Origin: Macrostomum lignano
Taxonomy: Eukaryota
Length of the DNA stretch: 64,000 nt
Direction of reading: 5' to 3'
NCBI GenBank assembly: GCA_002269645.1
Contig: NIVC01002242.1
Coordinates: 62,001-126,000 of the forward strand
Positions within the stretch are counted from its first letter, which is position 1, and each line of letters begins with the position of its first letter. The notes beneath the pieces are model-generated. The model searched no databases. It was not told the origin of the DNA and saw only the letters and a program-made list of their open reading frames with translations. A program made the position numbers and the translations under genes. This document shows, one piece after another, positions 3,501 to 56,195 of this stretch.

Positions 3501-4301
3501 AAAGCCCAGATGGCGGACGCTGCGACTGCCGAGACAGCTAATCAAGAAGAGATTGCTATCGGCGATTTATCGGACGATTCGTGCAGCAGCAGCAGCGACG
3601 AGGATGACGGGGTGGGCAACGATATCGAAGAATATTCACCGGTGAAGGTCAGCCAACAGCTGGCTGCCGCCGAAGCTGCCGCTGAAACTGCCACCAAAAC
3701 TGCTGGTGAAACTGCCGCTGAAACTGCTGGTGAAACTGCCGCTGAAACTGCCACCAAAACTGCTGGTGAAACTGCCGCTGAAACTGCCACCAAAACTGCT
3801 GGTGAAACTGCCGCTGAAACTGCCACCAAAACTGCTGGTGAAACTGCCGCTGAAACTGCCACCAAAACTGCCGCTGAAACTGCCACCAAAACTGCTGGTG
3901 AAACTGCCGCTGAAACTGCTGGTGAAACTGCCGCTGAAACTGCCACCAAAACTGCTGGTGAAACTGCCGCTGAAACTGCCACCAAAACTGCTGGTGAAAC
4001 TGCCGCTGAAACTGCCACCAAAACTGCTGGTGAAACTGCCGCTGAAACTGCCACCAAAACTGCCGCTGAAACTGCCACCAAAACTGCTGGTGAAACTGCC
4101 ACCAAAACTGCCACTGAAACTGCCGCTGAAACTGCCACCAAAACTGCTGGTGAAACTGCCGCTGAAACTACCAGCGAACCTGCCGCTGAAACTACCAGCG
4201 AACCTGCCGCTGAAACTGCCACCAAAACTGTAACTACATCCGTAGAAAATGTTAGCCAACAAGAAGGCGGAACGACCGTCGAAACTGCGGTAGACAATTG
4301 A
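543..4301 (+). CDS. DBR1: RNA lariat debranching enzyme; exons 543..818, 1757..2217, 3005..4301
   Basis: Motifs [26 protein letters not shown]|[29 protein letters not shown]|FLALDK. GT/AG sites join in frame (phase 0 and phase 2). Acidic tail is followed by a coding repeat; the C-terminal extent is less certain. Confidence 0.95.
1437..1676 (+). mobile_element. tRNA-derived SINE family A (CORE-like central domain), in DBR1 intron 1
   Basis: A-box-like TAGCCTAGTTG and B-box-like GGTTGGATTCC; second copy in opposite orientation at 24701..24922. Confidence 0.8.
2230..2835. repeat. 33-bp minisatellite in DBR1 intron 2
   Basis: Unit CACACCTGACCCAATCATCTGAGATTCTTCTGA, ~18 copies; explains spurious ORF 2185..2985. 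Confidence 0.95.
3665..4225 (+). repeat. 12-bp-based coding minisatellite ([12 protein letters not shown]) within DBR1 last exon
   Basis: Units GCTGAAACTGCC / ACCAAAACTGCT / GGTGAAACTGCC keep the DBR1 frame open to the stop at 4301. Confidence 0.9.
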
Positions 4302-4364
4302 TAAAATATTGATTGATTTTGTTCTTTAATTTTGTTTCTTAGATAATTTCTGCTGGACTCTCAG

Positions 4365-5095
4365 CTCTGTCTCACCTTACCTGTCCATCTCTGTCTCACC
4401 TTACCTGTCCATCTCTGTCTCACCTTACCTGTCCATCTCTGTCTCACCTTACCTGTCCATCTCTGTCTCACCTTACCTGTCCATCTGTCTAACCTTACAT
4501 ATCCATCTCTGTCTCACCTTACCTGTCAATCTCTGTCTCGCCTTATCTGTCCATCTCTGTCTCACCTTACCTGTCCATCTGTCTAACCTTACATATCCAT
4601 CTCTGTCTCACCTTACATATCCATCTCTGTCTAACCTTACATATCCATCTCTGTCTCACCTTACCTGTCCATCTCTATCTCGCCTTATCTGTCCATCTCT
4701 GTCTCACCTTACCTGTCCATCTGTCTAACCTTACATATCCATCTCTTTCTAACCTTACCTGTCCATCTCTGTCTCGCCTTATCTGTCCATCTCTGTCTCA
4801 CCTTACCTGTCCATCTCTGTCTCACCTTACCTGTCCATCTCTTTCTAACCTTACCTGTCCATCTCTGTCTCACCTTACCTGTCCATCTCTGTCTCACCTT
4901 ACCTGTCCATCTCTGTCTCACCTTACCTGTCCATCTCTGTCTCACCTTACCTGTCCATCTTTCTCACCTTACCTGTCCATCTGTCTCACCTTACCTGTCC
5001 ATCTCTGTCTCACCTTACCTGTCCATCTGTCTCACCTTACCTGTCCATCTGTCTCACCTTGCATATCCATCTCTTTCTAACCTTACCTGTCCAGC
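4365..5095. repeat. 24-bp minisatellite downstream of DBR1 (CTCTGTCTCACCTTACCTGTCCAT)
   Basis: ~30 units directly visible. Confidence 0.95.
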
Positions 5096-7401
5096 CCTAT
5101 CTCATCTGTCTATTAGCATTTTATGATAATGGCTCTTTGCTAAATGGTTAGCTTTGTGTTAGTGGTTCATTTATTTTGTTAACTACATCTTTTAAAAAAC
5201 AGCATTTCTTTTGTTTGTCGTGCTTGTCATTTGTCAAAAATTCAAATAGGTTAGTTGTTTGTTTATTCTGCTAAGATAGCAGTTCAAGAGTGCATGATTT
5301 TACGTTGTGTCTTCGCTGTTGTATTTACAATATTTAAGTTTTTTTATAAACTACTTGCAGTAGCTTATTTGCTCTGCTTGCTATTCTGTAAAAAAATTGC
5401 TAATTCGAATATTTTTAACCTATTCAAATAAATTAAATTGACGCCTTTGTGTTCACAAGCTCGCTTTCTATCTATCGATCATACTATTGTGTCGACTCTT
5501 AGCCGGCGAATTAGCTTATCATTAGCTTAATTCTTTAGATAATGTCACTTTGTGTTTTTTTGTTTAGTTGACTGGCCCTACGTACAACAGTGAGGTTATC
5601 TTATCTGCTGCTGATCCCAGACAAGGGTCGAAAAAGGCTCATTAGAAATGGAACGAAAATTCGCTGAATAAAAATACGTTTGCACTTTTGTAGGTTTCTG
5701 GAGATTTGGCAGTTCTTTACTACTAGTTTGGAGTCTGCAATTCCGAGTCTTCGAATTTCCTTGACTCTATACTTGACGACAGAGCTGCCTTAATTCCGCA
5801 TCTTCACGCGCCTCTCCGCAGACTCTTCTTCTTCTTCTGTTATCCCTTTCGGCCTCAAGAAGGCAATTAACAGGCCCTTTTACTGGCAGGCTAATTAAAA
5901 TAGCTCCCCTGGCATCGGCTTTGAATTGAAAGGTTCTGCAGCCTTCCGTGCGGAGTTGAAAGGCTTTTGGCACTCCTGATTTTGCTGCCCTCTAGGCTGT
6001 AATGAGTTACTGCTGTGATAGCTTGGTGAGGCTTTGAGTCAACAAGAGTGCAAGACAGGCTGACTGAGTGTCCATAGTCACATAGTTTCACCTGCTGAAG
6101 GTGTCGACACCGTCAGGACGATGACTGCTTGCTCGAGTGACTAGTTGAGGATGTCCAGCAATTGGGGTTTGCCCATTGTCGAGGCTTGATCAGAGCGACA
6201 GGGTTTCTATAGCCACCTGTTGAAGGTTCAGAAGCTTCTCCGTCTAGGTGAGTGCGACCACCACCGAAGTCAGAGGTGATGTTTGAAGCCTTGGCTTGGC
6301 CTCACCGAGGCGCACAAGGCAGGAGTGTGCTGAGTGTATTGAAAGGCTCACTAATGCTCAAGAAAGCCACTTCGTTCGACCTTCTGGCAGAATCGATGAA
6401 TACTGGATGGTCTGGAAATAAAGTTCTCTCGTGTTCTTAAATTTCGTGTGCCAATTATTGGCTTGGTATTCCTGGTGTTACTGTCCAATTAACAAGCAAT
6501 ATTGTGTGCCACCATGCACGTATTAAATGGTAGGTCCGGAATCACGGCTTGGCTATTCGGCTGCTTATCGCGCACTTGCGCCCCGGGATAGGATGGAGAC
6601 TACCGATATGTAGAGAAAATCAATTTCAATTAGTTTACATAATCGAGATCTTATCTCTTGCGAATGCATTGTATGGCCTGATCCATGACAACACAGAGCA
6701 TAAGAAATCTCAGATTTGCAATTGTCACTCAATTAATTGCATAATTATAACATTTTTTGTTTACTGTGACTGGCCTGGACCAATTTGCCCAAGCCACCAT
6801 TGCAGGTAGAGGCTTCACAAGTCCAACAATCACCTGCATAAGCGCTTGGCACAATCCTTTATAACCAAATTCTGCACCCACAATGTCCACTCGTGTTTAC
6901 ACAGGCTAGAGATTTCTGCCTTATAATGCGCAGACAGGCCCAGCAGTCACGAACGCTGACTTCTTATCGAGTCTTGTCACTGTCCGCCACTGATCTCTCT
7001 GCATCCAGGGTCCGAGCTGCATGCCCACTCTCTGCCCTGTCCAGGCCGCGCTTTCAATATAATGGACAACTGCCTAGCTAATGGCATTAGCGGACAGAGA
7101 GACAGGCCCAGCCCGCTTTTCCCAGGCTGTGTACAGTCTAATAAAAGCAAATTCGCAGGGTTGATCAAGTCCAAAGATATAAAAATTTGCTCGTTTGATT
7201 TTTATTACTCTCCAGCTGTATATTGGTTCATTTGTTAAAAGCACTTGAGTGGATGATAAGATCTTGCTGCTGCAGCTTAAGACATCTCTTTAGCTGTCAG
7301 TGAAATTCAGCCGCCTCAGTTAGTTGCTGGTTAAAAACCCAACAAGAGCGACAGCGAGTGTCCCCTCTGGCTGGGGCAGTCATAGCGATTTCGACCCAGT
7401 C

Positions 7402-10400
7402 ATGCCGAAGAAGTATAGCAGCAGTAGCGGCGGCGGCCTCGGCGGTAGCGCAGCTGGTGGCAGCGCATTTCTGGATTCGTCCGCGACGATGGCCTCCAGC
7501 TGCGGCGGCGGCGGCGACTTCGGCGCTCACAAGGCCGAGCGGCTGCACAACTACAGCCGTGAGTATCAGCTGTTCCACCGGTACAACGGCGCCGTCTTCG
7601 GCGGCTCGGAATCCTCCGAGGAGGTCATGGAGAAGCGCGGCTTTGCCATGTTCTCGCCGAGCGGCGGGGGCGGCGGCAGTCCGCCTTCATCGGCAGCGTC
7701 GACGTCCGGGTCAACTGCCACCGCAGTCGGTGGTACCGTCGGATCAACATCGGCTCTTGAGCGGCACGCCGGGTCGCCCAGGCAGCCAAAAACGGTGAGC
7801 TGTCGTTATTGGAATTCGACTGGTTAGCGATGGCCCATTTTACTGTGTCTAAGCTTTCCGGTGTGGTTTCATTGGATTTCCAGCTTTCCGATATGGTTTC
7901 GTTGGATTTCCAGCTTTCCGGTGTGGTTTCGTTGGATTTCCAGCTTTCCGGTGTGGTTTTGTTGGATTTCCAGCTTTCCGGTGTGGTTTCGTTGGATTTC
8001 CAGCTTTCCATTGTGGTTTTGTTGGATTTCCAGCTTTCCGGTGTGGTTTAGTTGGATTTCCAGCTTTCCGGTGTCGTGTGGTTTAGTTGAATTTCCAGCT
8101 TTCCGGTGTGGTTTCGTTGGATTTCCAGCTTTCCGGTGTGGTTTCGTTGGATTTCCAGCTTTCCGGTGTCGTGTGGTTTCGTTGAATTTCCAGCTTCCCG
8201 GTGTGGTTTCGTTGGATTTCCAGCTTTCCGGTGTGGTTTCGTTGGATTTCCAGCTTTCCGGTGTGGTTTCGTTGGATTTCCAGCTTTCCGGTGTGGTTTC
8301 GCTGGATTTCCAGCTTTCCGGTGTCGTGTGGTTTAGTTGAATTTCCAGCTTCCCGGTGTGGTTTCGTTGGATTTCCAGCTTTCCGTTGTGGTTTCGTTGG
8401 ATTTCCAGCTTCCCGGTGTGGTTTAGTTGGATTTCCAACTTCCACTCATACTGCATTGTTTGCTTTTGTTTGACTTAGTTTTCATTATTCCTAAAAAGGG
8501 GGCATCGCAGTGCTTGCGCTTCCGCAGGACAAAAGTGCGAAATGGTTTCCAGGAAATAAGCTGTTTCGATAACTTGTTTAGCTCTGCTTTTTGCAACATT
8601 AGCTTAGGCGCATTGCGTACTTGATCATCATGCGAAAACCGAGTTTGTACCGAGAAACTTACATCAAGTTTTTCCGTTCGGATTCCATTGCCAAGGACGC
8701 GCACTGTCCTGTGCCATGCCAGCTCTCTGTGCGCGAGGCTTTCCCGTGCTGTTTTCGATACAAAAATAGCAACCGGGGCTTCGCGCGCAGCTGCAGTATA
8801 AATTTATGGTACCCTGCTTCATCCATGCTTAAGCTCTGGACCCGAAACTCGCAATGCAGCTGGACGCGACCCCATCATTCCACCTCGTCTTCCCCATCCA
8901 TCAGGTGATGGTGCAGCCGCCGCGCCGAGTGAAGCTGGAGGCCATCAAGAAGGCCGCCTTCAAAGAGAAAAGCCCCGACGTCTCCAAGGATATCGGCCGG
9001 TGCAAGACCAACTCGGAGACGCGCCTGGACCTGTCCGGCCAGCGGCTGCTCGCCCTGCCTTCGACTGTGCGCGACTTGAACTTCGTCACCGAGCTCTATC
9101 TCTATGGCAACAAGCTCAGCCAGCTGCCTGACGAGATCGGCGCCATGGTGAGCCTGGAGAAGCTGATGCTGCAGCAGAACCACCTGTCCTGCCTGCCAAT
9201 GTCCATGCAGTACCTCACCAAGCTGCGAGTGCTGGACCTGCGCCACAACAAGCTGGAAGGCCGCCTGCCGCCAGTGATCTACAAGCTGTACGGCCTCACC
9301 CAGCTGCTGCTCACCTACAATAAAATCAGCGAGATCGACCCGGAGATTGGCAGCCTCATCAGCCTCATGGTGCTGGTTGTCAATAGCAACAACATTAACG
9401 GGGCCATACCGTCCAGCATCGGCACCCTGCGCCAGCTTGTGAAACTCGACCTGTCGCATAACAAAATCAGATCGGTGCCGGAGGAGCTGGGCCGCTGCCT
9501 GCTACTCTCTGACTGCAACCTGCAGCACAACTGCCTCACCAGCCTGCCGGACCACATGGGCGACTTGCGCAACCTCACCCGCCTGTGCCTGAAGTACAAC
9601 AGCCTCACCCAGCTGCCTCGCACTCTGGCCAACTGTCAGAAACTGCAGGAGCTCAACATCGAGAACAACAGCGTGCAGGCGATGCCAGACGGCCTGCTGG
9701 CCTCGATGCGCGGCCTCAGCACCATCGTGCTGTCGCGCAATCGCTTCCGCCGATTCCCAACTGGAAGCAGCGCGCAGTTCACGCAGACGCAGAGCCTGGC
9801 GCTCGATCACAACCAGATTGCGGAGATCCCGCCCGGGGCCTTCGCTGCTGCCCGCCAGCTGGCCAAACTGAGCCTCAGCTCCAACGAGCTGACCCAGCTG
9901 TCGGCCGAGACTGCCGCCAGCCTGCGCAATCTGGTGGAGCTCGACCTCAGCGGCAACGGGCTCGAATCCCTGCCGGAGGAGCTCGGCCACCTGAGGAAGC
10001 TGCGCAGCCTGTTGCTAAGCGACAATCAGCTGACTGGCCTGCCGGACAGCATCGGGAACTGCGCCTCGCTGCGCTCTCTGCTGCTGGACTACAACCAGCT
10101 CACCGACCTGCCGCTCGACATCAGCCAGCTGGGCGAGCTGCGGGAGCTCAGCCTCACTGGTAACCGCATGGCAACCGTTCCGCTCGGAGTCACCCTGCTG
10201 TCCCAGCTGACCCTGCTCAGGCTAAACGAGAACAAGCTCACCGAGGTGCCGCGCGAGATTAGCCGAATGACCTCGCTGCAAGAGCTTTACCTGAACGACA
10301 ACCACGAGTTGGACAATCTGCCGTCGGCTCTGTCGCAGTGCGCCCGGCTGGAAATCCTCAACATCGACCAGTGCCGGATGAGCCACGTGCCAGCTGAGAT

Positions 10401-10485
10401 TGTGAGCTGCGGCTCCAACGTGATCATGCGGTTCCTCAAGCAGGTGTTTGTCTACGAGAAGAACTGTCTGGTGCATGAGATTTGA
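7402..10485 (+). CDS. SHOC2: Leucine-rich repeat protein SHOC2/SUR-8; exons 7402..7794, 8905..10485 (~657 aa)
   Basis: RLDLS..LP..V..L..VTELYLYGNKL, LRVLDLRHNKL, LQELYLNDNHELDNLP.L..C..L.ILNI.C and the C-terminal I.RFLK match the SHOC2 LRR array. ACG|GTGAGC donor and CATCAG|GTG acceptor are in phase 0. Exon 1 (Ser/Gly-rich) is less certain. Confidence 0.88.
7855..8440. repeat. 30-bp minisatellite in SHOC2 intron
   Basis: Unit GTGTGGTTTCGTTGGATTTCCAGCTTTCCG; source of several spurious ORFs. Confidence 0.95.
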
Positions 10486-10599
10486 GTAGACTGAGTTTTT
10501 TGGTTGACTGTGTTTTTGTTTTTGCAACACGTGATTTTTAAAATCAGTTGACCTTTAAAATTTGAGTGATTTCGACTTATAGCTGCTTTCTGTTCAGTA

Positions 10600-11135
10600 C
10601 CAGGCTTCAAGATTCCAAGGTTTCAGAGCACCTGGGTTCCAGAATTTCATGGCTCCAAGGTTTCAGAGCACCTGGGTTCCAGAATTTCATGGCTCCAAGG
10701 TTTCAGGGTACCTGGGTTCCAGAATTTCATGGCTCCAAGGTTTCAGAGTACCTGGGTTCCAGAATTTCATGGCTCCAAGGTTTCAGATTTCCAAAGTTCC
10801 ATGGTTCCGGAGTTCCATGGTTCCAGAGTTCCAGAGTTCCATGGTTCCAGAGTTCCATGGTTCCGGAGTTCCATGCTTCCGGGGTTCCATGCTTCCGGGG
10901 TTCCATGCTTCCGGGGTTCCATGCTTCCGGGGTTCCATGCTTCCGGGGTTCCATGCTTCCGGGGTTCCATGCTTCCGGGGTTCCATGGTCCCGGGGTTCC
11001 ATGCTTCCGGGGTTCCATGCTTCCGGGGTTCCATGCTTCCGGGGTTCCATGGTCCCGGAGTTGCATGGTTCCGGAGTTCCATGGTTCCGGAGTTCCATGG
11101 TTCCGGAGTTCCATGGTTCCAGAGTTCCAAGGTTC
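10600..11135. repeat. Compound minisatellite 3' of SHOC2 (40-bp unit grading into 16-bp CCATGCTTCCGGGGTT)
   Basis: Directly visible. Confidence 0.92.
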
Positions 11136-12024
11136 CAGAAACCCACAGACTTTCTTGGCATTTCATTTCCTAGAAATAAACCAGCAACAACCGGCCTTCA
11201 AAATTTCTACTAATCAAGCATGCATTGTTTCGCTTCCGTTTGGGTTGGAACTTTGCCAAAAAACTTTCCAAACAATTTCGGAATGTTTGAAATGTTCAGT
11301 GACAAATGAGTCTTTTCAATTTATAGGCCCCTAGAATCATGTTTTGACGTATGTCATATGTAATCAAAACGTATGTCATTCTTAAGTCTTCATGTTTGAC
11401 TGCAACAATCATTTTTTATTTAGCAAATTCCATTCCTTAATTCTAAAACATTTTGCAGCCAGCTTTCAGTAGTTTTTGTGCAATATTAATGCGCCTAACA
11501 ATATTTATTGCTCATACAGAAGTGCTCAGTTCGTTCACAATCGTTTTTTTATTGTATTTTAAATTCGTTTCAATTGTAAAGACGCGCAGCTTTTAAAAGG
11601 TTGCAAATTTCAGTCACGTGACAACAATATCAATAAACGGGCAAATCCCGTGACCACTAATATAAAGTCTGACAACATGAGGAAATTGACAACTTATCTA
11701 TGCCAGTTTTGTTCAAAATCATCAGCTAGCTCTATAAACTTAGGCCTACCTATAAATAAACTTCCTGCTAACCCCATATTTTCATCTTATCAATGACCTC
11801 ACTTGACCTCCCCTCGAGACCTTCCTTAACATACTTCCCACATAAACTCTATCACTATGACCTCTCTCAATCATGACCTTTATTGTGACTTTCGATATGA
11901 CTTCTCAAATACCTTTCTATGACCCCCTATAAGATCTCTCTAACGAACCATTACCCACCATTACCTACCTAATTACCCTCATGACTTCTCATGATTTCCC
12001 AATGACCTCCCTAATGATCTCCTT

Positions 12025-13450
12025 CATGACCGTCCCTCATGACCGTCCCTCATGACCGTCCCTCATGACCGTCCCTCATGACCGTCCCTCATGACCGTCC
12101 CTCATGACCGTCCCTCATGACCGTCCCTCATGACCGTCCCTCATGACCGTCCCTCATGACCGTCCCTCAAGACCGTCCCTCATGACCGTCCCTCATGACC
12201 GTCCCTCATGACCGTCCCTCCTGACTGTCCCTCATGACCGTCCCTCCTGACCGTCCCTCATGACCGTCCCTCATGACCTCATGACCTCCCTCATGACCGT
12301 CCCTCATGACCGTTCTCATGACCTCATGACCTCCCTCATGACCGTCCCTCAAGACCGTCCCTCATGACCGTCCCTCATGACCGTCTCTCATGAACGTCCC
12401 TCATGACCGTCCCTCATGACCGTCCCTCATGACCTCCCTCAAGACCGTCCCTCATGACCTTCCTCATGACCGTCCCTCATGACCTCCTTCATGACCGTCC
12501 CTCCTGACCGTCCCTCATGACCGTCCCTCATGACCGTCCCTCATGACCGTCCCTCATGACCTCATGACCTCCCTCAAGACTGTCCCTCATGACCTTCCTC
12601 ATGACCGTCCCTCATGACCTCATGACTGTCCCTCATGACCGTCCCTCATGACCGTCCCTCATGACCTCATGACCTCCCTCATGACCGTCCCTCAAGACCG
12701 TCCCTCATGACCTTCCTCATGACCGTCCCTCCTAACTGTCCTTCATGAAGTCCTAATGACCTCCTTCATGACCGTCCCTCCTGACCGTCCCTCATGACCG
12801 TCTCTCATGAACGTCCCTCATGACCGTCCCTCATGACCGTCCCTCATGACCGTCCCTCATGACCTCCTTCATGACCGTCCCTCATGACCGTCCCTCCTGA
12901 CCGTCCCTCATGACCTTCCTCATGACCGTCCCTCATGACCGTCCCTCATGACCGTCCCTCCTAACTGTCCTTCATGAAGTCCTAATGACCTCCTTCATGA
13001 CCGTCCCTCATGACCGTCCCTCATGACCTTCCTCATGACCGTCCCTCATGACCTCATGACCTCCCTCATGACCGTCCCTCATGACCGTCCCTCATGACCT
13101 CATGACCTCCCTCATGACCGTCCTTCAAGACCGTCCCTCATGACCTTCCTCATGACCGTCCCTCCTAACTGTCCTTCATGAAGTCCTAATGACCTCCTTC
13201 ATGACCGTCCCTCCTGACCGTCCCTCATGACCGTCTCTCATGAACGTCCCTCATGACCGTCCCTCATGACCTTCCTTTATGACCGTCCCTCATGACCTCC
13301 TTCATGACCGTCCCTCATGACCGTCCCTCATGACCGTCCCTCATGACCTCCCTCAAGACCGTCCCTCATGACCTTCCTCATGACCGTCCCTCCTGACCGT
13401 CCCTCATGACCGTCCCTCATGACCGTCCCTCATGACCGTCCCTCATGACC
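12025..13450. repeat. 13-bp satellite (CATGACCGTCCCT), ~110 units
   Basis: Directly visible; degenerate copies extend left to ~11790. Confidence 0.97.
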
Positions 13451-13468
13451 TCCATTGCAATCTTCTCT

Positions 13469-14753
13469 TCAAACTTCCACGCCGCCCTGGCCGCCATCCG
13501 CGGCTTCAATCCGCTGCCTGCTGCTGCCTCCCCGAAGCGACGATGCCGCCTGCCCGACGTTGGTCGCCTGCTGGCCGCCGCCACCGCCGCCGCCGCAACA
13601 GCCGCCGAAACGGCACAGCGGCACTCGCATGAGAATGTCTACAGGGCCTCGAGAGAGCAGGCAAGCGATGGCCAGGTAGATGGACTGCATAGCCTGCAGC
13701 ATGTGGAACAGGTACCACAGGCAGAGTGCCTCGCAGTTGGGGTGCAGCGCCAGCGCCACCAAGCCACAGGGCCAAACAGCCGCCTGACTGGCCGCCAACC
13801 GGCAGAGCAGCTGCACCGCGTTAGCGGCCGATTCAGCGCCTGCGGCGGCCGCGGCGGCTGCGGCGCTACGCGCGGTGGCGCTGACAACCCCGGCGCGTCC
13901 AGCCGTCGCTGCTGCCGCCGCCGCTGAGGCCGCCGCCGCCTCCTCAGAAGCAGCTTGCGCTTCCGGAAGCAGATCGTCTCGCAATAGCAGCAACGGCGGA
14001 AGCAGCAACCAGTAGATGAAGGTGGCTGGACCGGCTAAAAGCAGGGCGTAGCCAACTGCGGCCGGGTGATCGGAGCCGCTGCCGCCGCTGCAGTTGCGGA
14101 AGAGAAGAGCGGTGCTGACCCGGGTGTAGCCAGTGTCCAGCGACTCTGTGAATGGCAATTGTTGCGTTTTATGAGCCGTCTCAAGGTTCAGAGGGTGGGG
14201 TTGTGTGTTTGCTGGGTTCAGAGATGGGTCAAAGCTATCATTGCTGACCGGAGATCCAGCGACCTGTCGCTCCCAGCGCCACCGGCACTCCGGCGAAGAT
14301 GCCGCAGGTGGCGAGACCCGCAGCCAGTCGGCGACGCCAGCCGCTCGAGTCCATCACTATCAGAGCGGCCGTCGAGGAAGGCGGCGGCGGGCGCCGGACC
14401 AGTCGACTTCGGACCCGCCGGCGGCGCCGATGCCCGATCCGGCGCCACAGGCTGGCGGCGCCCATGGCAACCAGACCGGCGCACAGTAGGTGACAGAAAT
14501 GCCCGACGGAGTTGCCGACAGCCAGGAGAACCGGCGAACTGGCGATGCCGGCAATCAGATTGGCGGCTCCGCCGGCTGCGTGAGCAACCAGTGCGGAAAC
14601 CTGCGCCCAGCCGTACAGTCTGCGCAGTTCGGGCAGGTAAGCCAGCGGCGCCAGGTGCAGCGCCATCGCCGCTTGGCCAACTGCCAGACACGTGAGCGGC
14701 AGCTGCATGTAGAAGTTTCTATCTGCTATCAGCATCCTTTGGGAGCCAAGCAT
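13469..14753 (-). CDS. Divergent class-B (adhesion/Methuselah-like) 7TM receptor; exons ~14753..14264 and 14145..13469; 5' end unresolved
   Basis: Seven hydrophobic segments with class-B-like signatures: YLPELRR after TM1, GHFCHLL in TM3, LLLAGP in TM5, VWPCG in TM6, LWYLFHMLQAMQSIY in TM7. A 118-nt GT-AG intron (phase 1) joins the two ORFs in frame. Confidence 0.65.
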
Positions 14754-26152: not shown

Positions 26153-31330
<5,178 letters not shown>

Positions 31331-31758
31331 TGCTGTTGTCACTTAATTAAAATAAATGATAAAGCCAATATCGAAACTGCCGAATTAATTTCAATTATAC
31401 TAACTGGATCTGGCTGGTCAGGGAAACCGCTCTTCAATCTATTTATAATATCTGCGCAGAGGCTGATGCCCCAGCCTTCTCCACGCTTTGACTGACTGAC
31501 CGCACGTGATGACCCCGCTTCGCCCTCGCTCCGAAGCTGAGGTGGGCGCCGCTGACCCCTTTCTCTCTCCCCATCTGTCGACCCCATTGTTTAGCAAAGA
31601 TTCGCGTCTCGGGTTAGGAAGATCTATTTTTAGCATCGTCAGCCCCGATGACGTCATGGAAAGGAATAGAATCGGATAAATGTGAGTGCTTTTCTCCGTC
31701 TGGCTAGGCCCTGCCTCTCGCCTCGGAAGACTCCGCCATGGGCCTCGGTGTCCCGCTA

Positions 31759-31775
31759 GGGTCAGGCTCGGGTCA
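31759..31775 (+). promoter_or_regulatory. DR5 nuclear-receptor element GGGTCA-GGCTC-GGGTCA (RARE consensus)
   Basis: Exact match to RGKTCA(N5)RGKTCA, ~430 bp upstream of the inferred CYP26 ATG; function untested. Confidence 0.5.
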
Positions 31776-33371
31776 CGAGGGTAAATGGAGCTCGAGCGGC
31801 CAGACGGGGGTCTGACTAAAGAGGGCTCCCGGGATTGGTGGGGAGCAAACTGGGATTTTCCTATCCGCCCTATACTTGCAGAGAAATTGAGGGCACTGGG
31901 TTTAGGGAAGGTGGGCGAGGGCCCGGGAGGGTTGAGACGCCCTTTGGAGTAGGTGACCGCGGGCCCTGAACTCAGACTGTGGGGTCGCGCCTGGGTTTTC
32001 TAGGCGTCAGGGTCCAACCAACATCTCTACCCAACCTCTTTGGCCCACAGAACTGTTGCAGAAATCTGCAGACTCCAGCTTAGAAAAAGCAGAGTGCCAA
32101 TTTTGACAACCGGGATCCAAATCCAGGATGCCAACAATTAAAGGTTGATGTGTCGTGACGCTCGCTATGACTCAGAAACCCAGGGTCACGCGGACTGATT
32201 CAAACTGTGTAAATGGTGTTAGTTGCTTGTAACTGTGCGGTGATGTCAAATTTTATGCCTAGCATTGACTCATCGGACAACGGGGGGGGTCACCAGTCGT
32301 GTAGCTTAGAGAATTTCTGCTTTCAAGGCTTCACAATTTGAAGAACAATGTCCATCTCACATAGGTGTGAAAGTTACAAGATTGCTCACGTCATATGTAA
32401 GCCCCTCAGTGCGCAGTTTTGCGATAAATTTTTACTTAAGAAGCGAATCAGCTACTCGTTTCAAATGAATCAGTAGTAGTATCGAGCATCAATACTGATA
32501 CAACTGAAATTTATTTATTTTATTCATCATTTTATTTTTCATTTATCAATTTTGTACATTTTAACTACTGCATTTTTTATCCTAGATACAAGATTTAGAA
32601 GTATTATTCTCTCAATACTACTGAACTTACAATTTCTGAAAGTTGATTTCGTTATAATTTTCAAGGAAGATTCCGCATGACCGCCCATATCATAGCTTCC
32701 GGGAGTCAAAGATTGATCAAATCAATTTTAAAATGAGTCTAAACCAATTGTACACTGATTTGAGCAAAAGTATGTGTACATTGTCAGAACACTAATTTAT
32801 TGTAGTGATAAATATGAAACGAAAATTTCATTGGATGTTTTACCTAAGAGAATAATATCATAACACATCAGAAAGCTTAATGACTAAGTACATAGTTAAT
32901 GTCACATACTCGTATCTGGGTGGAACTGCCTGGTTACAGAGCAAGTTCATTTCAGACCCGTTGTTTTTGCCAACGAATGCTCGGAGCAGACGGTTAGCCT
33001 CCCCCCGTGACCATCTGATAATAGGTCGAGTTTGTTGATGCGATTGCAAAAGTCTAATAGCCTTAATCAGTTCCTGTTGTTCAGCATCGAAACAGCTGTT
33101 ACAAGTGAGCAGAAATGCTCATTAGTGCTCTAAAACTCTATCTAGTCCTAGTCAGTCCTAGTTCAGGAACTACTCAATACTCTGTCCTAGTTGCTTGATT
33201 TTGTTTATGTATAGGAAATGCTCTGGTCCTCAGAGCAATGGCAAATTGTCTATCATATTGAGCTGAGCTGTTTTGGCTATGCATACTATCACCCAGACAC
33301 AATAGCAATCAGTTTTGGCCATTATTCCACAGCTGCTACCCACAGTTTTTATAGTTAGTAGAGGCCCAAGG

Positions 33372-33672
33372 GCTGGCGCACTTTAAGCGACATTGTCACA
33401 CAACTGGCGAGAGGCATTGCTGCCCATTCCGTACGCAGTCATACGCACAGGCTGTACACACTCACACAGGAGTGTACAGCGGCCCTAACTTTATTTATCG
33501 CTAGGCATGTACACTTTGTGCCTTGGGGGGGTTGGCTCTCAAGGCCGTTAATTGCACGAGCAGAGCCAAGCCGAGATTCCAATTCAGCCCCAAATTAATG
33601 TGACTGCACTTGGAATCGAGCCTGGGCCGCTGGCACATCAGAGCGCCGCACTGGACCACTGGGCTACACCCC
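33372..33672 (-). mobile_element. tRNA-derived SINE family B
   Basis: A-box TAGCCCAGTGG, B-box-like GGCTCGATTCC; homologous copies at 33848..34115 and 62939..63266. Confidence 0.85.
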
Positions 33673-33847
33673 CCCGGTGGAAGGGAGAAATCCGCATGTA
33701 AGATGCACTTGTTGAGCCGATTTGAACATTGTAAGAAACAATTTACCATTTCCACACATGGCAAAAGCTGAGGGGTGGTCAGGTGGATAAAAATAGACAT
33801 GCAAAAGCAGTCACGCGATGAACTTTGTACATGGGGGTTAACTGTAC

Positions 33848-34115
33848 ATTAGCCCAGTGGTCTAGCGCGCAGCGGCCCAGGCTCGATTCCAAATGCAGTC
33901 ACATTAATTTTGGGGCTAAATTGGAATCTCGGATCGGCTCTGCTCTTGTAATTAACACCAACCCCAAAGGCACAAGGAAGTGTACATGTCTAACGATAAA
34001 TAAAGTTAGGGCCGCTGTACACTCCCGTGCGAGTGTGTACCTGCTCCGGGGAGTCGGTGGAATGGGCAGCAATGCCTCTCGCCGGATGTGTGACAATGTC
34101 GCTTAAAGTGCGCCA
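33848..34115 (+). mobile_element. tRNA-derived SINE family B
   Basis: Inverted homologue of 33372..33672, ending in GACAATGTCGCTTAAAGTGCGCC. Confidence 0.85.
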
Positions 34116-51500: not shown

Positions 51501-53333
51501 TATTCCTCCTATAAGCCCTGACACCTCAGAAATTCCTTCCGTAAGCCTTGACATCCCAGAAATCCCCCCGTGAGCCTTGAAATCTTAGTAATTCTCCCCA
51601 AGAGTCACAGCATAGTTTCACGTGACGTTTTTTTCTGTTTTATATGACGCTTATTTTATGCCTTCATGAAGCTTTTTTATTTTTTACATGACGTTTTTTT
51701 ATGTCTGACATGACGCTTCTTTTATGTCTGACATGACGCTTCTTTTATGTCTGACATGACGTTTCATCTATGTCTGACATGACGCTTCTTTTATGTCTGA
51801 CATGACGCTTCATCTATGTCTGACATGACGCTTCTTTTATGTCTGACATGACGCTTCATTTATGTCTGACATGACGTTTCATCTATGTCTGACATGACGC
51901 TTCTTTTATGTCTGACATGACGCTTCTTTTATGTCTGACATGACGTTTCATCTATGTCTGACATGACGCTTCTTTTATGTCTGACATGACGTTTCATCTA
52001 TGTCTGACATAACGCTTCTTTTATGTCTGACATGACGCTTCATCTATGTCTGACATGACGCTTCTTTTATGTCTGACATGACGCTTCTTTTATGTCTGAC
52101 ATGACGTTTCATCTATGTCTGACATGACGCTTCATTTATGTCTGACATGACGTTTCATCTATGTCTGACATAACGCTTCTTTTATGTCTGACATGACGCT
52201 TCTATGTCTGACATGACGCTTCATCTATGTCTGACATGACGCTTCTTTTATGCCTACACCACGCTTCTTACATCATCTTCACATCACCTGTCTTATCTCC
52301 AACACCAAAAGGAGAAAGGGTTCAAGACAGTAGAAAAGCAGAGACAGGCCAAAGTTATAGGTTCGATTCCGTGCGTGGCCCACATTGATTTGGGGCTTGT
52401 GCATGAAAATTATTGCCTATGAAGGCCAGCCCCCAATGACAATATCAAGGCTGCTGTGTCGGGCTTTCTGATTGGCTGGACAAAATCAGGCCCAGTAGGG
52501 CTACACGGAGAGACATTGTCGCAGAGCAAACGCATAGGTATAACATCGTTAGTGTCTATCCATTCCCAGACTTACAAATAATTCTTAGTTACCATCTCTA
52601 TTCAATATCCAGAATAAACAAAATAGCATCCACTATAAAAGTTTCAGGAGCAGCAATGCAGCACGATTGGAATGGCACAGTGCAGGAGCAGCAACGGCTA
52701 GTCAGACTGCAGCTCTATCTGTGGGGCTATTTCGGCACCGGTCTCAGTCTATTAGGCATGGCCGGCAATGCTCTTAGCATTCGAGTACTCTGCTCACGCA
52801 GAATGTATTCGTCCACTGCGCTGTACCTGGCGGCGCAAGGCTTCTTAGACATTATTGTGCTGCTATTGTTCGACATCTGCATGGGCCTGCCGCTTGTGTC
52901 GGCTGTGTTTGCCCGCCTAGCCAGGCCCGACTCGCTGCTGATCGGCATACTCTACCCGCTGTCCCTGTTCATTCACATGTGCGGCATGTACGTCACAGCC
53001 TGCTTCACTGTGGAACGCTGCCTCTCAGCAAAATTCCCACTTCGCTCCACTAGCGCCTGCAGCCGCAGACGAGCTCGAAGACGCCTAATGGCCATCTTTC
53101 TGTTCTCTTTAATCTACAATGCGCCTCGAGGCTTCGAACGAATGCCATTCGGGAATGAGACTGAGAACAATTCGAGGAACGGCACTTGGACTCTGATTGA
53201 CAATTGGTGGTATCGCGGTATCTACAGCGGCGCAATGTACTCGCTATTTATGTACGTGCTACCTCTAACTCTAATCACTGTGTCTAATGCTGTTCTTGTT
53301 CACACTGTACGGAAGTCAACTCGCAGGACTACT

Positions 53334-53406
<73 letters not shown>

Positions 53407-56195
53407 TGATGCCCAGTAGCCCAAGGGGACCCAGCAGGCAATCAAGCCAACAGTTGAAACGGCTGGAACGGGACCGCAGCATCAGCAGGATGCTTGCCGG
53501 AGTGGTTGTTGTGTTCGTCCTCTGCCAGACCTTCGCTCTAGTGGACAATTTGGCGGCAGTGGTGCTGCAGACTCCGCCTAACCCGTTGGCGCACTGGCAG
53601 CAAGCGTTTTACATCGTCGCCCAGTTTATGATTGTCCTCAATTCGTCAGTAAATTTCATTCTCTATTGCTTTTTTGGCCAAAGATTTCGGAGGGAATTGC
53701 AATTGACTCTGTGCGCCGGCGGTGGCGGAGTCGGTGGACAGCAGAATGCCGGACGTCAAGCCGGAAGCAACATAGCTTTGCAGAATATGAACGGAAGTCG
53801 AACGCCCAGCCAGTTGCACGGCAGTGCCAGCCCGTTATGGAGCAGTCCTAGTCCGCAGCACGGCTGCGCCAGTCTGCTGGCCAGTCCCGAACCAAACCGA
53901 TCAAAGCTTGCCCGAGCTGTCTCAAGCAGGCGAGAGCAGCGAAATTGGCTGATGGCCGAACAGGAGCCAATGCAGATTGATGATTCGCCTCCGGCGTCAA
54001 TTTGACTTTCTGATGCTTTGCTAGGCTTTTGTACTATATTATATTCATTCTCATAGCAGAGTTCCCCTGTCTTTGTTCGCTTAGCAGTGTATCTCAATGC
54101 TACCTCACAAGAGTCTTTGTTGTTCGCTTAGCAGTGTCTCTCAATGCTACCCCACAACAGTCTTTGTTGTTCTCTTAGCAGTGTCTCCCAATGCTACCCC
54201 ACAACAGTCTTTGTTGTTCTCTTAGCAGTGTCTCCCAATGCTACCCCACAACAGGTCTTTGTTGTTCGCTATCCCAGATTTCACAAGTCTTTGTTTACGC
54301 AACAGACTACAATTATTATCTTTGTGATTAAAAAACGCAGGTTTATTTTAATCTGAAATAAGAATACCTTAATTTAGCACGCTAGAACCTGCCTCGCCGC
54401 CTACGAGCACTTACTTAGCTTACGGCCACTCCATCCTAATGCTGGAATTTCTTTATACCATACTTTCTGCTTGTTTTTTTCTTTCACCACTCAGTTTCTG
54501 TTCGTGACTTTTCCAGACTTTTCCTGGCAAAAATTTTGAGCACAACTCCTAAACCAAATTGTTGTGATAATTGTCTCAATTTTGAGTCGAGACTGACATC
54601 CATTCTTTATTACATCCGCATAGAAAAAATACACGTGAATAGCACTGAAAAAAATGGTAAATTTCTGGAAAGATAAAGTTCAAATCGCTAGCAAACATGT
54701 ACATCTAAATCGGATAGAGGGCATCAAAGATTGAACTCACTGTTTTGTACTTTTTTGCTGCCCTCTGGCCGACTTTGCTTCAAGTTGCTTGTTGTCCTCT
54801 TCTGCGAGAGTTTGAGGAGAGGGAAAGGATTAAGGGGAGAAGGGAAGGATTAATCAGATTTGGAAGGAATGAGAAGAGAGAGAACAATTACGGAGAAAGG
54901 GAGGAATAATGAGGGATTAAGTAATGATTAAGGGGAAAGAAGGATTAAGGAGATTAAGGAAGGATTAAGCAGTGGGAATCGAGAATCAGGAAATATCGGT
55001 GTTGAAAAGGTGACGCAGAGCAAGATATCTAATCTGGCCTAAAAGTTGCACAAAAGGCTTCAAGACAGGAGATAAAATATTCGAGTGGGGGGTGTCGGTG
55101 CAAACTTGGCAGACCAGGTTTGCGAAGTTTAAGGGGCTAGGGGAGCTAGACAAGAGGGTAGCGGGATAACAGCTCGTGGAAGATTTACAGGCACGGGATT
55201 AGAGGCCTTTAGCTTTTCTATCTAATGGCTACTGTGAAAGGGCTAGTGTTAATTGCTTAATGCTAATAGGCTAATGCTAATGGACTAATGCCGATGGACT
55301 AATGCTACTGTAAAAATGCTAATGGACTAATGCTACTTGAAAAATGCTAATGGACTAATTCTACTGGACTAATGCTAATAGACTAATGCTAATGGACTAA
55401 CGCTACTTGAAAAATGCTAATGGACTAATGCTAATGGAGTAATGCTAATGGACTAATGCTAATTGACAAATGCTACAGGAAAAATGCTAATGGACTAATG
55501 CTGATGGACTAATGCTACTGGAAAATGCTAAAAGACTAATGCTAATGGACTAGTGCTAATGGACTAATGCTGATAGGCTACCAAAAATAATCAGGAGCAA
55601 ATATTCACCCTGCTCAGCCCTCGGCGCCGCGCCGCCCTCTGCCAGCTGCTCAAGCCGCCGCTCCAGCTGCTCCAGCCGCTCTCGATAAGCCTTCTCACCG
55701 TCGGCTTTGCCGGCCTCGTCACCTTCGCCGCTCCGACGCTCGTCAGCATCGGCTCCGTGATTGTCGTCGACACCATCGTCGTCCAACTCGCCAGCCGGCC
55801 TCCGACTGCGGAACCGCTTGTAGGCCGCGTCAATCTTCGGAGTCGGCAGCCTTCTCGACTTCGATTCATCTTCGTTGCCGCCTCCTCCAGCGTCGGTGGC
55901 GGCCGACGAGGAGCCGAGGAATTCCAGGAATTCTTCCAGTCCGGGCACATCGGCAAGAACCTCGACGGCCGCTCGATCGCCCTGACGGTCCAGCTGGTCA
56001 AGCGAGTCGAGCTGCGGCAGGCCGGCAAGCAGCTGGCGCCGGTAGTCCCGCTGCCGACACGCCGGGTTGTCCGCCGACGCCAGGCTGAGCGTCAGGTGGC
56101 GCAGGTTGCGGCACTGCCTGAGCGACTTCGTCAGCTGCGACACCGCGCGAATCTGCCGACGTTTGGGGAGCTGCTACGGTTCACTGAATTGCCTG

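What the first reader, a model, noticed from the sequence alone, without database searches (positions are those of the whole stretch)
31759..31775. Perfect DR5 retinoic-acid-response-type element upstream of the CYP26-like gene
GGGTCA-N5-GGGTCA lies ~430 bp 5' of the inferred ATG, in a GC-rich stretch that also holds CACGTG (~31503) and TGACGTCA (~31648) (seen). Vertebrate Cyp26a1 is induced through DR5 RAREs (established). Rough odds at uniform composition are ~1e-6 per position: ~1e-3 within 500 bp on both strands, ~0.1 for the whole window. If real, this indicates an RA-type feedback loop in a lineage (possibly flatworm) where RAR presence is doubtful, or its capture by another nuclear receptor (inference).
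Basis: partly seen in the sequence, partly recalled or inferred. Interest (0 to 1): 0.7.

Follow-up and report, generated by a model that had tools for sequence, protein, structure and literature searches.

The report
Receptor-site cluster upstream of flatworm CYP26-like gene
A perfect GGGTCA-N5-GGGTCA repeat really does sit about 430 bp upstream of the likely start of a divergent CYP26-like P450 gene in a flatworm, at the core of a clearly non-random cluster of the same motif; it is probably a regulatory module, but nothing here shows that it responds to retinoic acid, and flatworms are reported to lack the retinoic acid receptor.

Summary
GGGTCAggctcGGGTCA lies at 31759-31775, once in the window. 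It is 429 bp upstream of a plausible 9-codon first exon (31330-31304, minus strand) of a six-exon P450 gene.

The element is not isolated. Six GGGTCA and ten GGGTC cores fall within 31510-32292, about ten times the expected number. Unbiased k-mer enrichment ranks this motif family first.

The host is a flatworm: its SHOC2 protein is 73% identical to that of Macrostomum lignano. The P450's best matches are animal CYP26 proteins, but only at 29-35% identity, and its tree placement is unresolved.

Published surveys report RAR missing from flatworms, while RXR, TR, COUP-TF, TR2/4 and HR96 are present. Five invertebrate CYP26 loci fetched here have no DR5. Mouse and catfish Cyp26a1 have several, including a distal GGGTCA-N5-GGGTCA.

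The most likely reading is a promoter module bound by a receptor other than RAR, or by another factor that recognises GGGTC. It is not an inherited RARE. Conservation, receptor binding and inducibility could not be tested. Interest is moderate.

The parts
31759..31775 (+). Perfect DR5: GGGTCA ggctc GGGTCA. It reads TGACCCgagccTGACCC in the orientation of the gene.
31779..31784 (+). Third, imperfect half-site GGGTAA, 3 bp after the DR5 (DR5 + DR3 arrangement)
31510..32292 (.). Homotypic motif cluster. GGGTCA at 31510(-), 31553(-), 31759(+), 31770(+), 32183(+), 32287(+). Further GGGTC cores at 31580(-), 31808(+), 31982(+), 32010(+). One AGTTCA at 31967(-). Copies below about 31650 are on the minus strand and copies above it on the plus strand.
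31440..32050 (.). GC-rich (58%) single-copy island. GC skew changes sign at about 31650 (negative at 31400-31650, positive at 31750-32000).
31649..31656 (.). Palindromic CRE-type site TGACGTCA, followed on the minus strand by a TATA-like TAAAAATAG (31633-31625)
31503..31508 (.). E-box CACGTG, embedded in GGGGTCATCACGTGCGGTCAGTCAGTCA on the minus strand
31439..31447 (-). TATAAATAG, 109 bp upstream of the putative ATG, with no other ATG in between
32168..32292 (+). Two TGACTCA (AP-1/bZIP-type) sites at 32168 and 32266. Each lies 8-14 bp upstream of a GGGTCA (32183, 32287).
31304..31330 (-). Putative exon 1 coding part: MENIFACEH, context gcaATGG, donor GTAAGT, phase 0 (model only, no RNA evidence)
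29369..31303 (-). Putative intron 1 (or outron). It contains the 23-bp satellite at 29447-31267, 79 copies, each with GGGTCA or GGTTCA on the minus strand.
28858..29368 (-). Exon 2: membrane anchor and the PPG...GE motif. The acceptor cag|TTC at 29368 is the only phase-0 acceptor after the in-frame stop at 29407-29405.
28198..28373 (-). Exon 3
27853..28015 (-). Exon 4
27307..27560 (-). Exon 5: I-helix (ASYDTL) and ETLR
26153..26542 (-). Exon 6: FRPERW, heme-binding FGFGRTRCLG, stop TGA at 26155-26153

Best explanation
The DR5 is the densest part of a cis-regulatory module about 0.8 kb long. The module is a GC-rich, single-copy, promoter-like island just upstream of the putative first exon of a divergent clan-26 (CYP26-like) P450 gene in a macrostomid-like flatworm. 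It is built from repeated GGGTC(A) / GGGGTC motifs.

The most likely mechanism is this. One or more nuclear receptors that flatworms do possess occupy the GGGTCA half-sites, and a dimer sits on the DR5. Candidates are RXR alone or as a partner, TR, COUP-TF, TR2/4 or HR96-type receptors. Together with bZIP-type (TGACGTCA, TGACTCA) and E-box factors, they would set transcription of the P450. The element is not an orthologue of the vertebrate Cyp26a1 RAREs; if it works, it arose independently.

Shown: the motif, the cluster and its statistics, the gene and its family-level affinities, and the lineage.
Inferred: that the island is the P450 promoter, that nuclear receptors bind it, and any ligand dependence.
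For: - The motif is unique in the window. The targeted chance of finding it is 0.002-0.014.
- GGGTCA occurs 6 times in 1 kb against 0.6 expected (P = 5e-5 by local shuffles; p = 1.2e-6 against the unmasked window).
- It is an ordinary hexamer elsewhere: 20 copies in 44.7 kb of unmasked sequence, rank 948 of 2080, and 6 of those 20 are here.
- Unbiased k-mer enrichment ranks GGGGTC (6 vs 0.12, p = 4e-9) and GGGTC (10 vs 0.9) first.
- GGGGTC occurs 11 times in the whole window, and 6 of those are here.
- The region is single-copy, is not derived from the satellite, and has no internal repeat that could create the cluster.
- It contains no RNA gene and no protein domain.
- Promoter context: TATAAATAG, the first ATG in a good context, a CRE and an E-box.
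- Flatworms have RXR, TR, COUP-TF, TR2/4 and many HR96 receptors (PMC8363021). SmTRalpha binds half-sites and DR0-DR5 (PMC2045677).
- The vertebrate Cyp26a1 distal enhancer is likewise a half-site cluster around GGGTCA-N5-GGGTCA (PMC9249609).
Against: - There is no expression, binding or conservation evidence of any kind.
- The enriched core is GGGTC/GGGGTC, not the receptor consensus RGKTCA. Four of the ten cores lack the final A. The usual variants AGGTCA and GGTTCA are absent from the cluster, and AGTTCA appears once. A factor other than a nuclear receptor could fit as well.
- Given four same-strand GGGTCA sites in about 530 bp, an exact 11-bp spacing has roughly a 1% chance (hand estimate), or about 3% for any DR1/2/5. 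The spacing itself is therefore only modest evidence.
[quoted passage not shown] The start codon could therefore be donated at the acceptor at 29368, which would leave the promoter undefined.
- The island lies between two head-to-head genes (P450 and TTLL) and has a GC-skew switch. It may serve a divergent transcript.
Confidence: 0.37

Rival explanations
1. The cluster is a real regulatory module, but it is read by a factor that is not a nuclear receptor and that recognises GGGGTC / GGGTCAC-type sites (for example a zinc-finger protein). The 5-bp spacing of two copies is incidental.
For: - The top enriched words are GGGGTC and GGGTC, not RGKTCA.
- Four cores end in G, T or C instead of A.
- Two sites share the longer string GGGTCACGnGG.
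- Canonical receptor variants are nearly absent.
- Motif strand follows the GC-skew switch.
Against: - Six of the ten cores are exact receptor half-sites.
- Two of them form a perfect DR5 with a third imperfect half-site at DR3.
- A G-extended GGGGTCA resembles RXR/NR2-type preferences (from my memory of HT-SELEX motifs, not tested here).
Confidence: 0.28
2. The DR5 has no function. It is a by-product of local sequence composition or history in a repeat-rich genome.
For: - 30% of the window is tandem repeat.
- Several satellites carry receptor-type half-sites, including 79 copies in intron 1 and six AGGTCAtgAGGTCA repeats at 12.2-13.1 kb.
- A relaxed DR5 also occurs at 14215.
- Protostome CYP26 loci have no DR5.
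Against: - The cluster survives dinucleotide shuffling, satellite masking and a window-wide scan.
- The region has no detectable similarity to the satellites and no internal repeats.
Confidence: 0.25
3. It is a genuine RARE. An RAR/RXR heterodimer induces this CYP26-like enzyme in response to retinoic acid, which would be a classical negative feedback loop retained or re-evolved in this flatworm.
For: - The half-sites and spacing are the same as in the distal DR5 of mouse and catfish Cyp26a1.
- The gene's best matches are animal CYP26 proteins, and the nearest solved structure is CYP120A1, entry 2ve3.
Against: - RAR is reported missing from all flatworms surveyed, including M. lignano (PMC8363021).
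- No DR5 was found at five invertebrate CYP26 loci, nor at annelid and mollusc loci in PMC5247814.
- There is no flank similarity to the vertebrate element.
Confidence: 0.04

Closest known systems
Vertebrate Cyp26a1 RAREs: proximal R1 (AGTTCA-N5-AGTTCA) and the distal RARE2/3/4 cluster
   Same: - A direct repeat of RGKTCA with a 5-bp spacer lies upstream of a CYP26-type gene.
- The distal element of mouse (GGGTCAcaggcGGGTCA, about -2.0 kb) and of catfish (GGGTCAgcagcGGGTCA, about -3.07 kb) uses exactly the same half-sites.
- In mouse that element is embedded in a cluster of further half-sites. Such a cluster was not examined in catfish.
- RA responsiveness and RARalpha occupancy of the distal cluster are documented (PMC9249609).
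   Different: - There is no sequence similarity outside the hexamers.
- The window has no AGTTCA-type proximal R1.
- The lineage is reported to lack RAR.
- Protostome CYP26 loci lack such elements (PMC5247814). The relationship is therefore analogy at most, not orthology.
Amphioxus CYP26 cluster DR5 elements (Carvalho et al. 2017, PMC5247814)
   Same: Several DR-type elements lie around CYP26 genes of an invertebrate, and they were predicted from sequence first.
   Different: In amphioxus, 12 of 13 DR5 elements were shown to bind the animal's own RAR/RXR in vitro, and the genes respond to RA. Nothing comparable exists here, and no RAR is expected.
Flatworm nuclear receptor-DNA interactions (SmTRalpha; SmRXR1 as its protein partner)
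   Same: AGGTCA-type half-sites and DR0-DR5 are bound in vitro by a flatworm TR as a monomer or homodimer (PMC2045677). This shows that a flatworm receptor can read such elements.
   Different: - Those assays used synthetic AGGTCA oligonucleotides and schistosome proteins.
- TR/RXR1 mixtures gave no heterodimer shift in that study.
- No natural target element upstream of a P450 has been described.
CYP26 family / CYP120A1 (clan 26 retinoic acid hydroxylases)
   Same: - All P450 signatures are intact.
- The best full-length matches are animal CYP26 proteins (up to 221 bits; named hits from Lingula, Branchiostoma, Anneissia, molluscs and echinoderms).
- The best PDB match is CYP120A1, entry 2ve3.
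   Different: - Identity is only 29-35%, below the 40% family convention.
- The protein sits on a long branch, and support for grouping it with animal CYP26 is 42%.
- The substrate is unknown.

Membership tests
RARE (RAR/RXR-bound DR5 response element) | Two RGKTCA half-sites in direct orientation with a 5-bp spacer | tested here: met
   GGGTCAggctcGGGTCA at 31759-31775
RARE (RAR/RXR-bound DR5 response element) | Lies in the regulatory region of the regulated gene | tested here: inconclusive
   The DR5 is 429 bp upstream of a modelled mini-exon ATG and about 310 bp upstream of a TATA box. There is no RNA evidence, SL trans-splicing is an open alternative, and the island is shared with a head-to-head TTLL gene.
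RARE (RAR/RXR-bound DR5 response element) | An RAR exists in the organism and binds the element together with RXR | not testable with these tools
   Only this window is available. The literature reports RAR missing from all flatworms surveyed, while RXR is present (PMC8363021).
RARE (RAR/RXR-bound DR5 response element) | Confers retinoic acid inducibility | not testable with these tools
   This needs exposure and reporter experiments.
RARE (RAR/RXR-bound DR5 response element) | Conserved at orthologous loci | tested here: not met
   No close orthologue exists in the public protein collections, and the source contig is not on record, so no sister-species test was possible. At the level of more distant CYP26 genes, 0 of 5 invertebrate loci have a DR5 against 2 of 2 vertebrate loci. 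There is no flank similarity to the vertebrate element.
CYP26 family (P450 nomenclature) | P450 fold signatures (I-helix, ExxR, PERF, FxxGxRxCxG) | tested here: met
   ASYDTL, ETLR, FRPERW and FGFGRTRCLG are present. The homologues found carry PF00067.
CYP26 family (P450 nomenclature) | At least about 40% amino-acid identity to family members | tested here: not met
   Identity is 29-35% to vertebrate and invertebrate CYP26 proteins.
CYP26 family (P450 nomenclature) | Nearest relatives are CYP26 proteins | tested here: met
   The full HMMER scan with exon 2 returned mollusc, priapulid, crinoid, lamprey and marsupial CYP26 proteins as top named hits. Full-length BLASTP gave 181-221 bits to animal CYP26 and 159 bits or less to CYP120-like and plant proteins from the first search; in the comparison set, P0355 (JGI 'retinoid hydroxylase') and cyanobacterial P0376 scored 173-174 bits.
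CYP26 family (P450 nomenclature) | Groups with animal CYP26 in a tree | tested here: inconclusive
   NJ tree with 300 bootstraps: window protein plus animal CYP26 42%; animal CYP26 without the window protein 84%; long branch.
CYP26 family (P450 nomenclature) | Retinoic acid 4-hydroxylase activity | not testable with these tools
   This needs expression of the enzyme and an assay.
Nuclear receptor half-site cluster (generic hormone response module) | Local over-representation of RGKTCA half-sites beyond what composition predicts | tested here: met
   Six GGGTCA against 0.6 expected, P = 5e-5. This is the only such cluster in the window.
Nuclear receptor half-site cluster (generic hormone response module) | The enriched motif matches the receptor consensus and not some other word | tested here: inconclusive
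   The top words are GGGGTC and GGGTC. Four of the ten cores lack the terminal A, and AGGTCA/GGTTCA variants are absent.

The most novel reading that the evidence does not exclude
A flatworm that has no RAR has independently coupled a CYP26-like retinoid-type hydroxylase to a DR5 element read by RXR (alone or with TR or another partner). This would give a retinoid or other lipid-ligand feedback loop that does not depend on RAR. It would also mean that the pairing of CYP26 with a GGGTCA DR5 arose twice, in deuterostomes and in flatworms.
Probability: 0.08. Interest if true: 0.75.

Novelty: new variant of a known kind. Interest (0 to 1): 0.45.

Why it matters
Direct control of CYP26 by retinoic acid through DR5 elements is thought to be a deuterostome innovation, and flatworms are thought to have lost RAR. 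A functional DR5 module on a CYP26-like gene in a flatworm would therefore mean one of two things: a receptor other than RAR controls a retinoid-type catabolic enzyme, or retinoid sensing in this phylum has been underestimated. It would also offer a concrete handle, testable with Macrostomum transgenesis, on what the expanded flatworm nuclear receptor set regulates. If the element is inert, the case is a useful warning: a textbook-perfect response element next to the textbook target gene can arise without the receptor being present.

Tried and rejected
- Source genome: exact look-ups of the SHOC2-like and GPCR proteins found no record. No sister-species promoter could be fetched, so conservation remains untested.
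I used exon 2 alone instead.
- The first homologue search suggested cyanobacterial CYP120 and plant CYP85-clan affinity. This was an effect of the word filter. BLASTP against real CYP26 proteins and the unfiltered scan reversed the ranking.
- The first bootstrap tree timed out. A tree with only vertebrate CYP26A1 gave 7% support; adding invertebrate CYP26 proteins raised it to 42%. The placement is still unresolved.
- The idea that the DR5 derives from the neighbouring 23-bp satellite, which also contains GGGTCAG, was rejected. BLASTN of 31270-32450 against the window found nothing but itself, and the half-sites lie on opposite strands. A finer alignment was lost when the script machine failed.
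- A cryptic internal repeat as the cause of the cluster was rejected.
- An RNA gene, tRNA or protein domain in the island was rejected.
- The idea that the enriched unit is only the bZIP-like core TGAC was partly rejected. TGAC/GTCA is enriched 3-fold, but the longer words GGGTC and GGGGTC are far more enriched.
- Homology of the DR5 flanks with the mouse and catfish distal enhancers was rejected.
- My search query differed from the final gene model by five residues at two junctions. This is too little to affect the results.

Full report

Yes. GGGTCAGGCTCGGGTCA occupies 31759-31775 on the + strand. It is the only perfect GGGTCA-N5-GGGTCA in the 64 kb; shuffles give 0.01 expected, and 1 of 100 contains one. 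The stretch 31440-32050 is 58% G+C.

**2. The gene and its 5' end.**

The P450 lies on the minus strand. From the sequence I derive six exons with consistent phases:
- exon 1: 31330-31304
- exon 2: 29368-28858
- exon 3: 28373-28198
- exon 4: 28015-27853
- exon 5: 27560-27307
- exon 6: 26542-26153, including the stop codon

The total is 1521 nt, or 506 codons. The I-helix (ASYDTL), ETLR, FRPERW and the heme-binding FGFGRTRCLG are all intact.

The large exon 2 has no ATG before its membrane anchor, and an in-frame TGA lies at 29407-29405. The only phase-0 acceptor after that stop is cag|TTC at 29368.

Upstream of a 1.82-kb satellite (23-bp unit, 79 copies, 29447-31267) lies ATG GAA AAT ATT TTT GCC TGC GAA CAT|GTAAGT at 31330-31304. 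This is the first ATG after TATAAATAG (31447-31439). It has a good context (gcaATGG) and is in phase with the acceptor.

The exon remains a model. In Macrostomum 20-30% of genes are trans-spliced, and the M. lignano spliced leader ends in ...TTGCATG (PMC8629364; PMC10468722). The leader could therefore donate the AUG at the same acceptor. In that case the DR5 is 2.39 kb from the first coding exon and the promoter is undefined.

**3. Lineage.**

The window also encodes a single-exon SHOC2-like protein. Its best hit is Macrostomum lignano soc-2 (73% identity over half the query), followed by schistosomes at 44%. Other genes in the window (a rhodopsin-type GPCR, DBR1, a CDK-like kinase, a TTLL) fit an animal. 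The source is a flatworm related to M. lignano but not identical to it. Neither the contig nor a close P450 orthologue is in the public collections I could search.

**4. Is the gene CYP26?**

The word-filtered search returned cyanobacterial CYP120-type and plant CYP85-clan proteins at about 31% identity. The best solved structure is CYP120A1, entry 2ve3.

A full HMMER scan of 1.84 billion representatives with exon 2 gave animal CYP26 proteins as the top named hits: Solemya, Pinctada, Physella, Sinanodonta, Priapulus, Anneissia, lamprey 26B1-like and marsupial 26C1.

The best full-length BLASTP scores are 181-221 bits to animal CYP26 proteins, including those of Lingula, Branchiostoma, Argopecten, Haliotis and Apostichopus. 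CYP120-like and plant proteins from the first search score 159 bits or less. In the second comparison set, a JGI 'retinoid hydroxylase' (P0355) and a cyanobacterial P450 (P0376) reached 173-174 bits.

Identity is only 29-35%, however. The protein sits on a long branch, and an NJ bootstrap groups it with animal CYP26 in only 42% of replicates. It is a divergent clan-26 P450. 'CYP26-like' is fair; formal family membership is not shown. No flatworm protein appears among its named relatives.

**5. How unlikely is the element?**

Twenty thousand dinucleotide shuffles of the 1 kb upstream of the ATG gave these chances:
- perfect motif: 0.00025
- any RGKTCA DR5: 0.002
- any DR1/2/5: 0.007
- any DR0-5: 0.014

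More important, the DR5 is not alone. GGGTCA occurs six times in that 1 kb against 0.6 expected (P = 5e-5).

After tandem repeats are masked (30% of the window), GGGTCA is an average hexamer: 20 copies in 44.7 kb, rank 948 of 2080. Six of those 20 lie at 31510-32292, and no other 1-kb interval comes close.

An unbiased k-mer comparison with the rest of the unmasked window ranks this motif family first:
- GGGGTC: 6 vs 0.12, p = 4e-9
- GGGTC: 10 vs 0.9, p = 5e-8
- GGGTCA: 6 vs 0.32, p = 1e-6

GGGGTC occurs only 11 times in the whole window, where shuffles predict about 23, and six of those copies are here. By hand, that is about 1e-9 for a fixed interval and about 1e-7 after allowing for scanning.

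The region is single-copy in the window and shows no similarity to the satellites. It has no internal repeat that could generate the cluster. It holds no Rfam family, tRNA or Pfam domain. The cluster is therefore a real local feature.

Conditional on four same-strand GGGTCA sites in about 530 bp, an exact DR5 spacing has about a 1% chance (hand estimate). The spacing therefore adds only modest evidence beyond the cluster.

**6. Anatomy of the module.**

In gene orientation the order is:
- the DR5 (31775-31759), preceded on the far side by an imperfect third half-site (GGGTAA, DR3)
- a palindromic CRE (31656-31649), followed closely by TAAAAATAG
- three minus-strand GGGGTC cores (31585-31511), one of them fused to the E-box
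- TATAAATAG (31447-31439)
- the ATG (31330)

Distal to the DR5 lie further plus-strand cores at 31808, 31982, 32010, 32183 and 32287. The last two are each preceded by TGACTCA at 8-14 bp.

Motif strand and GC skew both switch at about 31650. This would fit a divergent promoter. The next plus-strand gene is a TTLL whose recognisable exons start beyond 38.4 kb.

**7. Comparison with known systems.**

I fetched real CYP26 loci, in each of which the ATG is at position 4001.

Mouse Cyp26a1 has AGTTCAcccaaAGTTCA 118-134 bp upstream, and GGGTCAcaggcGGGTCA about 2.0 kb upstream inside a cluster of further half-sites. Catfish has AGTTCAcacaaAGTTCA at about -0.16 kb, GGGTCAgcagcGGGTCA at about -3.07 kb, and four more DR5 elements. 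The distal vertebrate element thus uses exactly the half-sites seen in the window. It corresponds to the documented RA-responsive, RARalpha-occupied RARE2/3/4 region (PMC9249609). Outside the hexamers the flatworm sequence shows no similarity to it.

Five invertebrate CYP26 loci have no RGKTCA DR5 anywhere in the gene plus 4 kb on each side: Physella, Priapulus, Anneissia, Pinctada and Sinanodonta. One caveat is that their annotated 5' ends may be incomplete.

Carvalho et al. 2017 likewise found no such element in Capitella or Lottia. They concluded that direct DR5 control of CYP26 arose at the base of deuterostomes (PMC5247814).

RAR is reported missing from all flatworms surveyed, including M. 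lignano. RXR (2), TR (2), COUP-TF (2), TR2/4 (2) and HR96 (16) are present (PMC8363021). Schistosome TRalpha binds half-sites and DR0-DR5 without spacing preference (PMC2045677).

**8. Interpretation.**

- Best reading (about 0.37): a promoter-proximal regulatory module of the CYP26-like gene, in which the GGGTCA sites, and the DR5 in particular, are read by a nuclear receptor other than RAR.
- Close rival (about 0.28): the module is real but is read by a different factor that recognises GGGGTC/GGGTCAC. The enriched core is not the receptor consensus, and the usual half-site variants are missing.
- Non-functional coincidence (about 0.25): this cannot be excluded for the DR5 arrangement itself.
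- A true RAR-dependent RARE: unlikely (about 0.04).

None of these can be separated without RNA mapping, sister-species alignment, binding assays and reporters.

**9. Novelty and score.**

A DR5 upstream of a CYP26-type gene is a known kind of element. In an RAR-less flatworm it would be a new variant, and a convergent one. The sequence evidence for a non-random motif cluster is good, but functional evidence is absent. Interest is moderate (0.45). It would rise to about 0.75 if an RAR-independent retinoid-type feedback were demonstrated; I put the probability of that at about 0.08.

Noticed in passing
window 29447-31267: A 23-bp satellite (79 copies, unit TTCTACCTGAGCTACTGACCCAA) fills the putative intron 1 of the P450. 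On the gene strand each unit carries GGGTCA or GGTTCA, so half-sites recur every 23 bp for 1.8 kb.
   Followed up: partly
window 26611-26914, 27601-27794, 28434-28834: Three more introns of the P450 hold their own tandem array: (CTAT)76, a 59-bp repeat and a 19-bp repeat. With the intron 1 satellite, that is four of the five introns; no array was found in intron 3. Overall 30% of the window is tandem repeat, in 44 blocks.
   Followed up: partly
window 12002-13450: A satellite containing AGGTCAtgAGGTCA (a DR2-type repeat) six times. Receptor-type hexamers are thus common in this genome's satellites.
   Followed up: no
window 14215-14231: A second, relaxed DR5 (GGTTCAgagatGGGTCA) in a GC-rich region with long overlapping ORFs on both strands.
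   Followed up: no
window 26153-31330: A CYP26-like (clan 26) P450 in a flatworm. No flatworm protein appears among its named relatives, and no hit better than 1e-30 was found with its largest exon in 1.84 billion representatives. The gene itself may be unreported for the phylum.
   Followed up: partly
window 32161-32292: Two copies of a composite, TGACTCA followed 8-14 bp later by GGGTCA, lie 98 bp apart with partly similar flanks (CTCGCTATGACTCA / CTAGCATTGACTCA).
   Followed up: partly
window 31400-32000: The GC skew changes sign sharply at about 31650, next to the palindromic CRE. This may mark a divergent promoter between the P450 and the TTLL gene.
   Followed up: partly
window 31339-31587 (-): If transcription starts at the upstream TATA-like element (about 31630), an 82-codon upstream ORF would end 6 nt before the proposed P450 start codon.
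   Followed up: no
window 33501-34106: Two ORF-like stretches in opposite orientation encode nearly the same peptide (…RPRLDSKCSHINLG…). This suggests an inverted repeat or the remnant of a mobile element.
   Followed up: no
window 8854-10485 and 52656-54005: Two intact single-exon genes: a SHOC2-like LRR protein (543 aa) and a rhodopsin-type GPCR (449 aa) with a long polyglutamine tract in its third intracellular loop region.
   Followed up: partly
L006 (Pinctada CYP26-like locus) 2752-13792: Nineteen DR2-type RGKTCA repeats at regular spacing of about 146 bp lie upstream of and inside the gene. They are evidently a repeat family that carries receptor-type half-sites.
   Followed up: no
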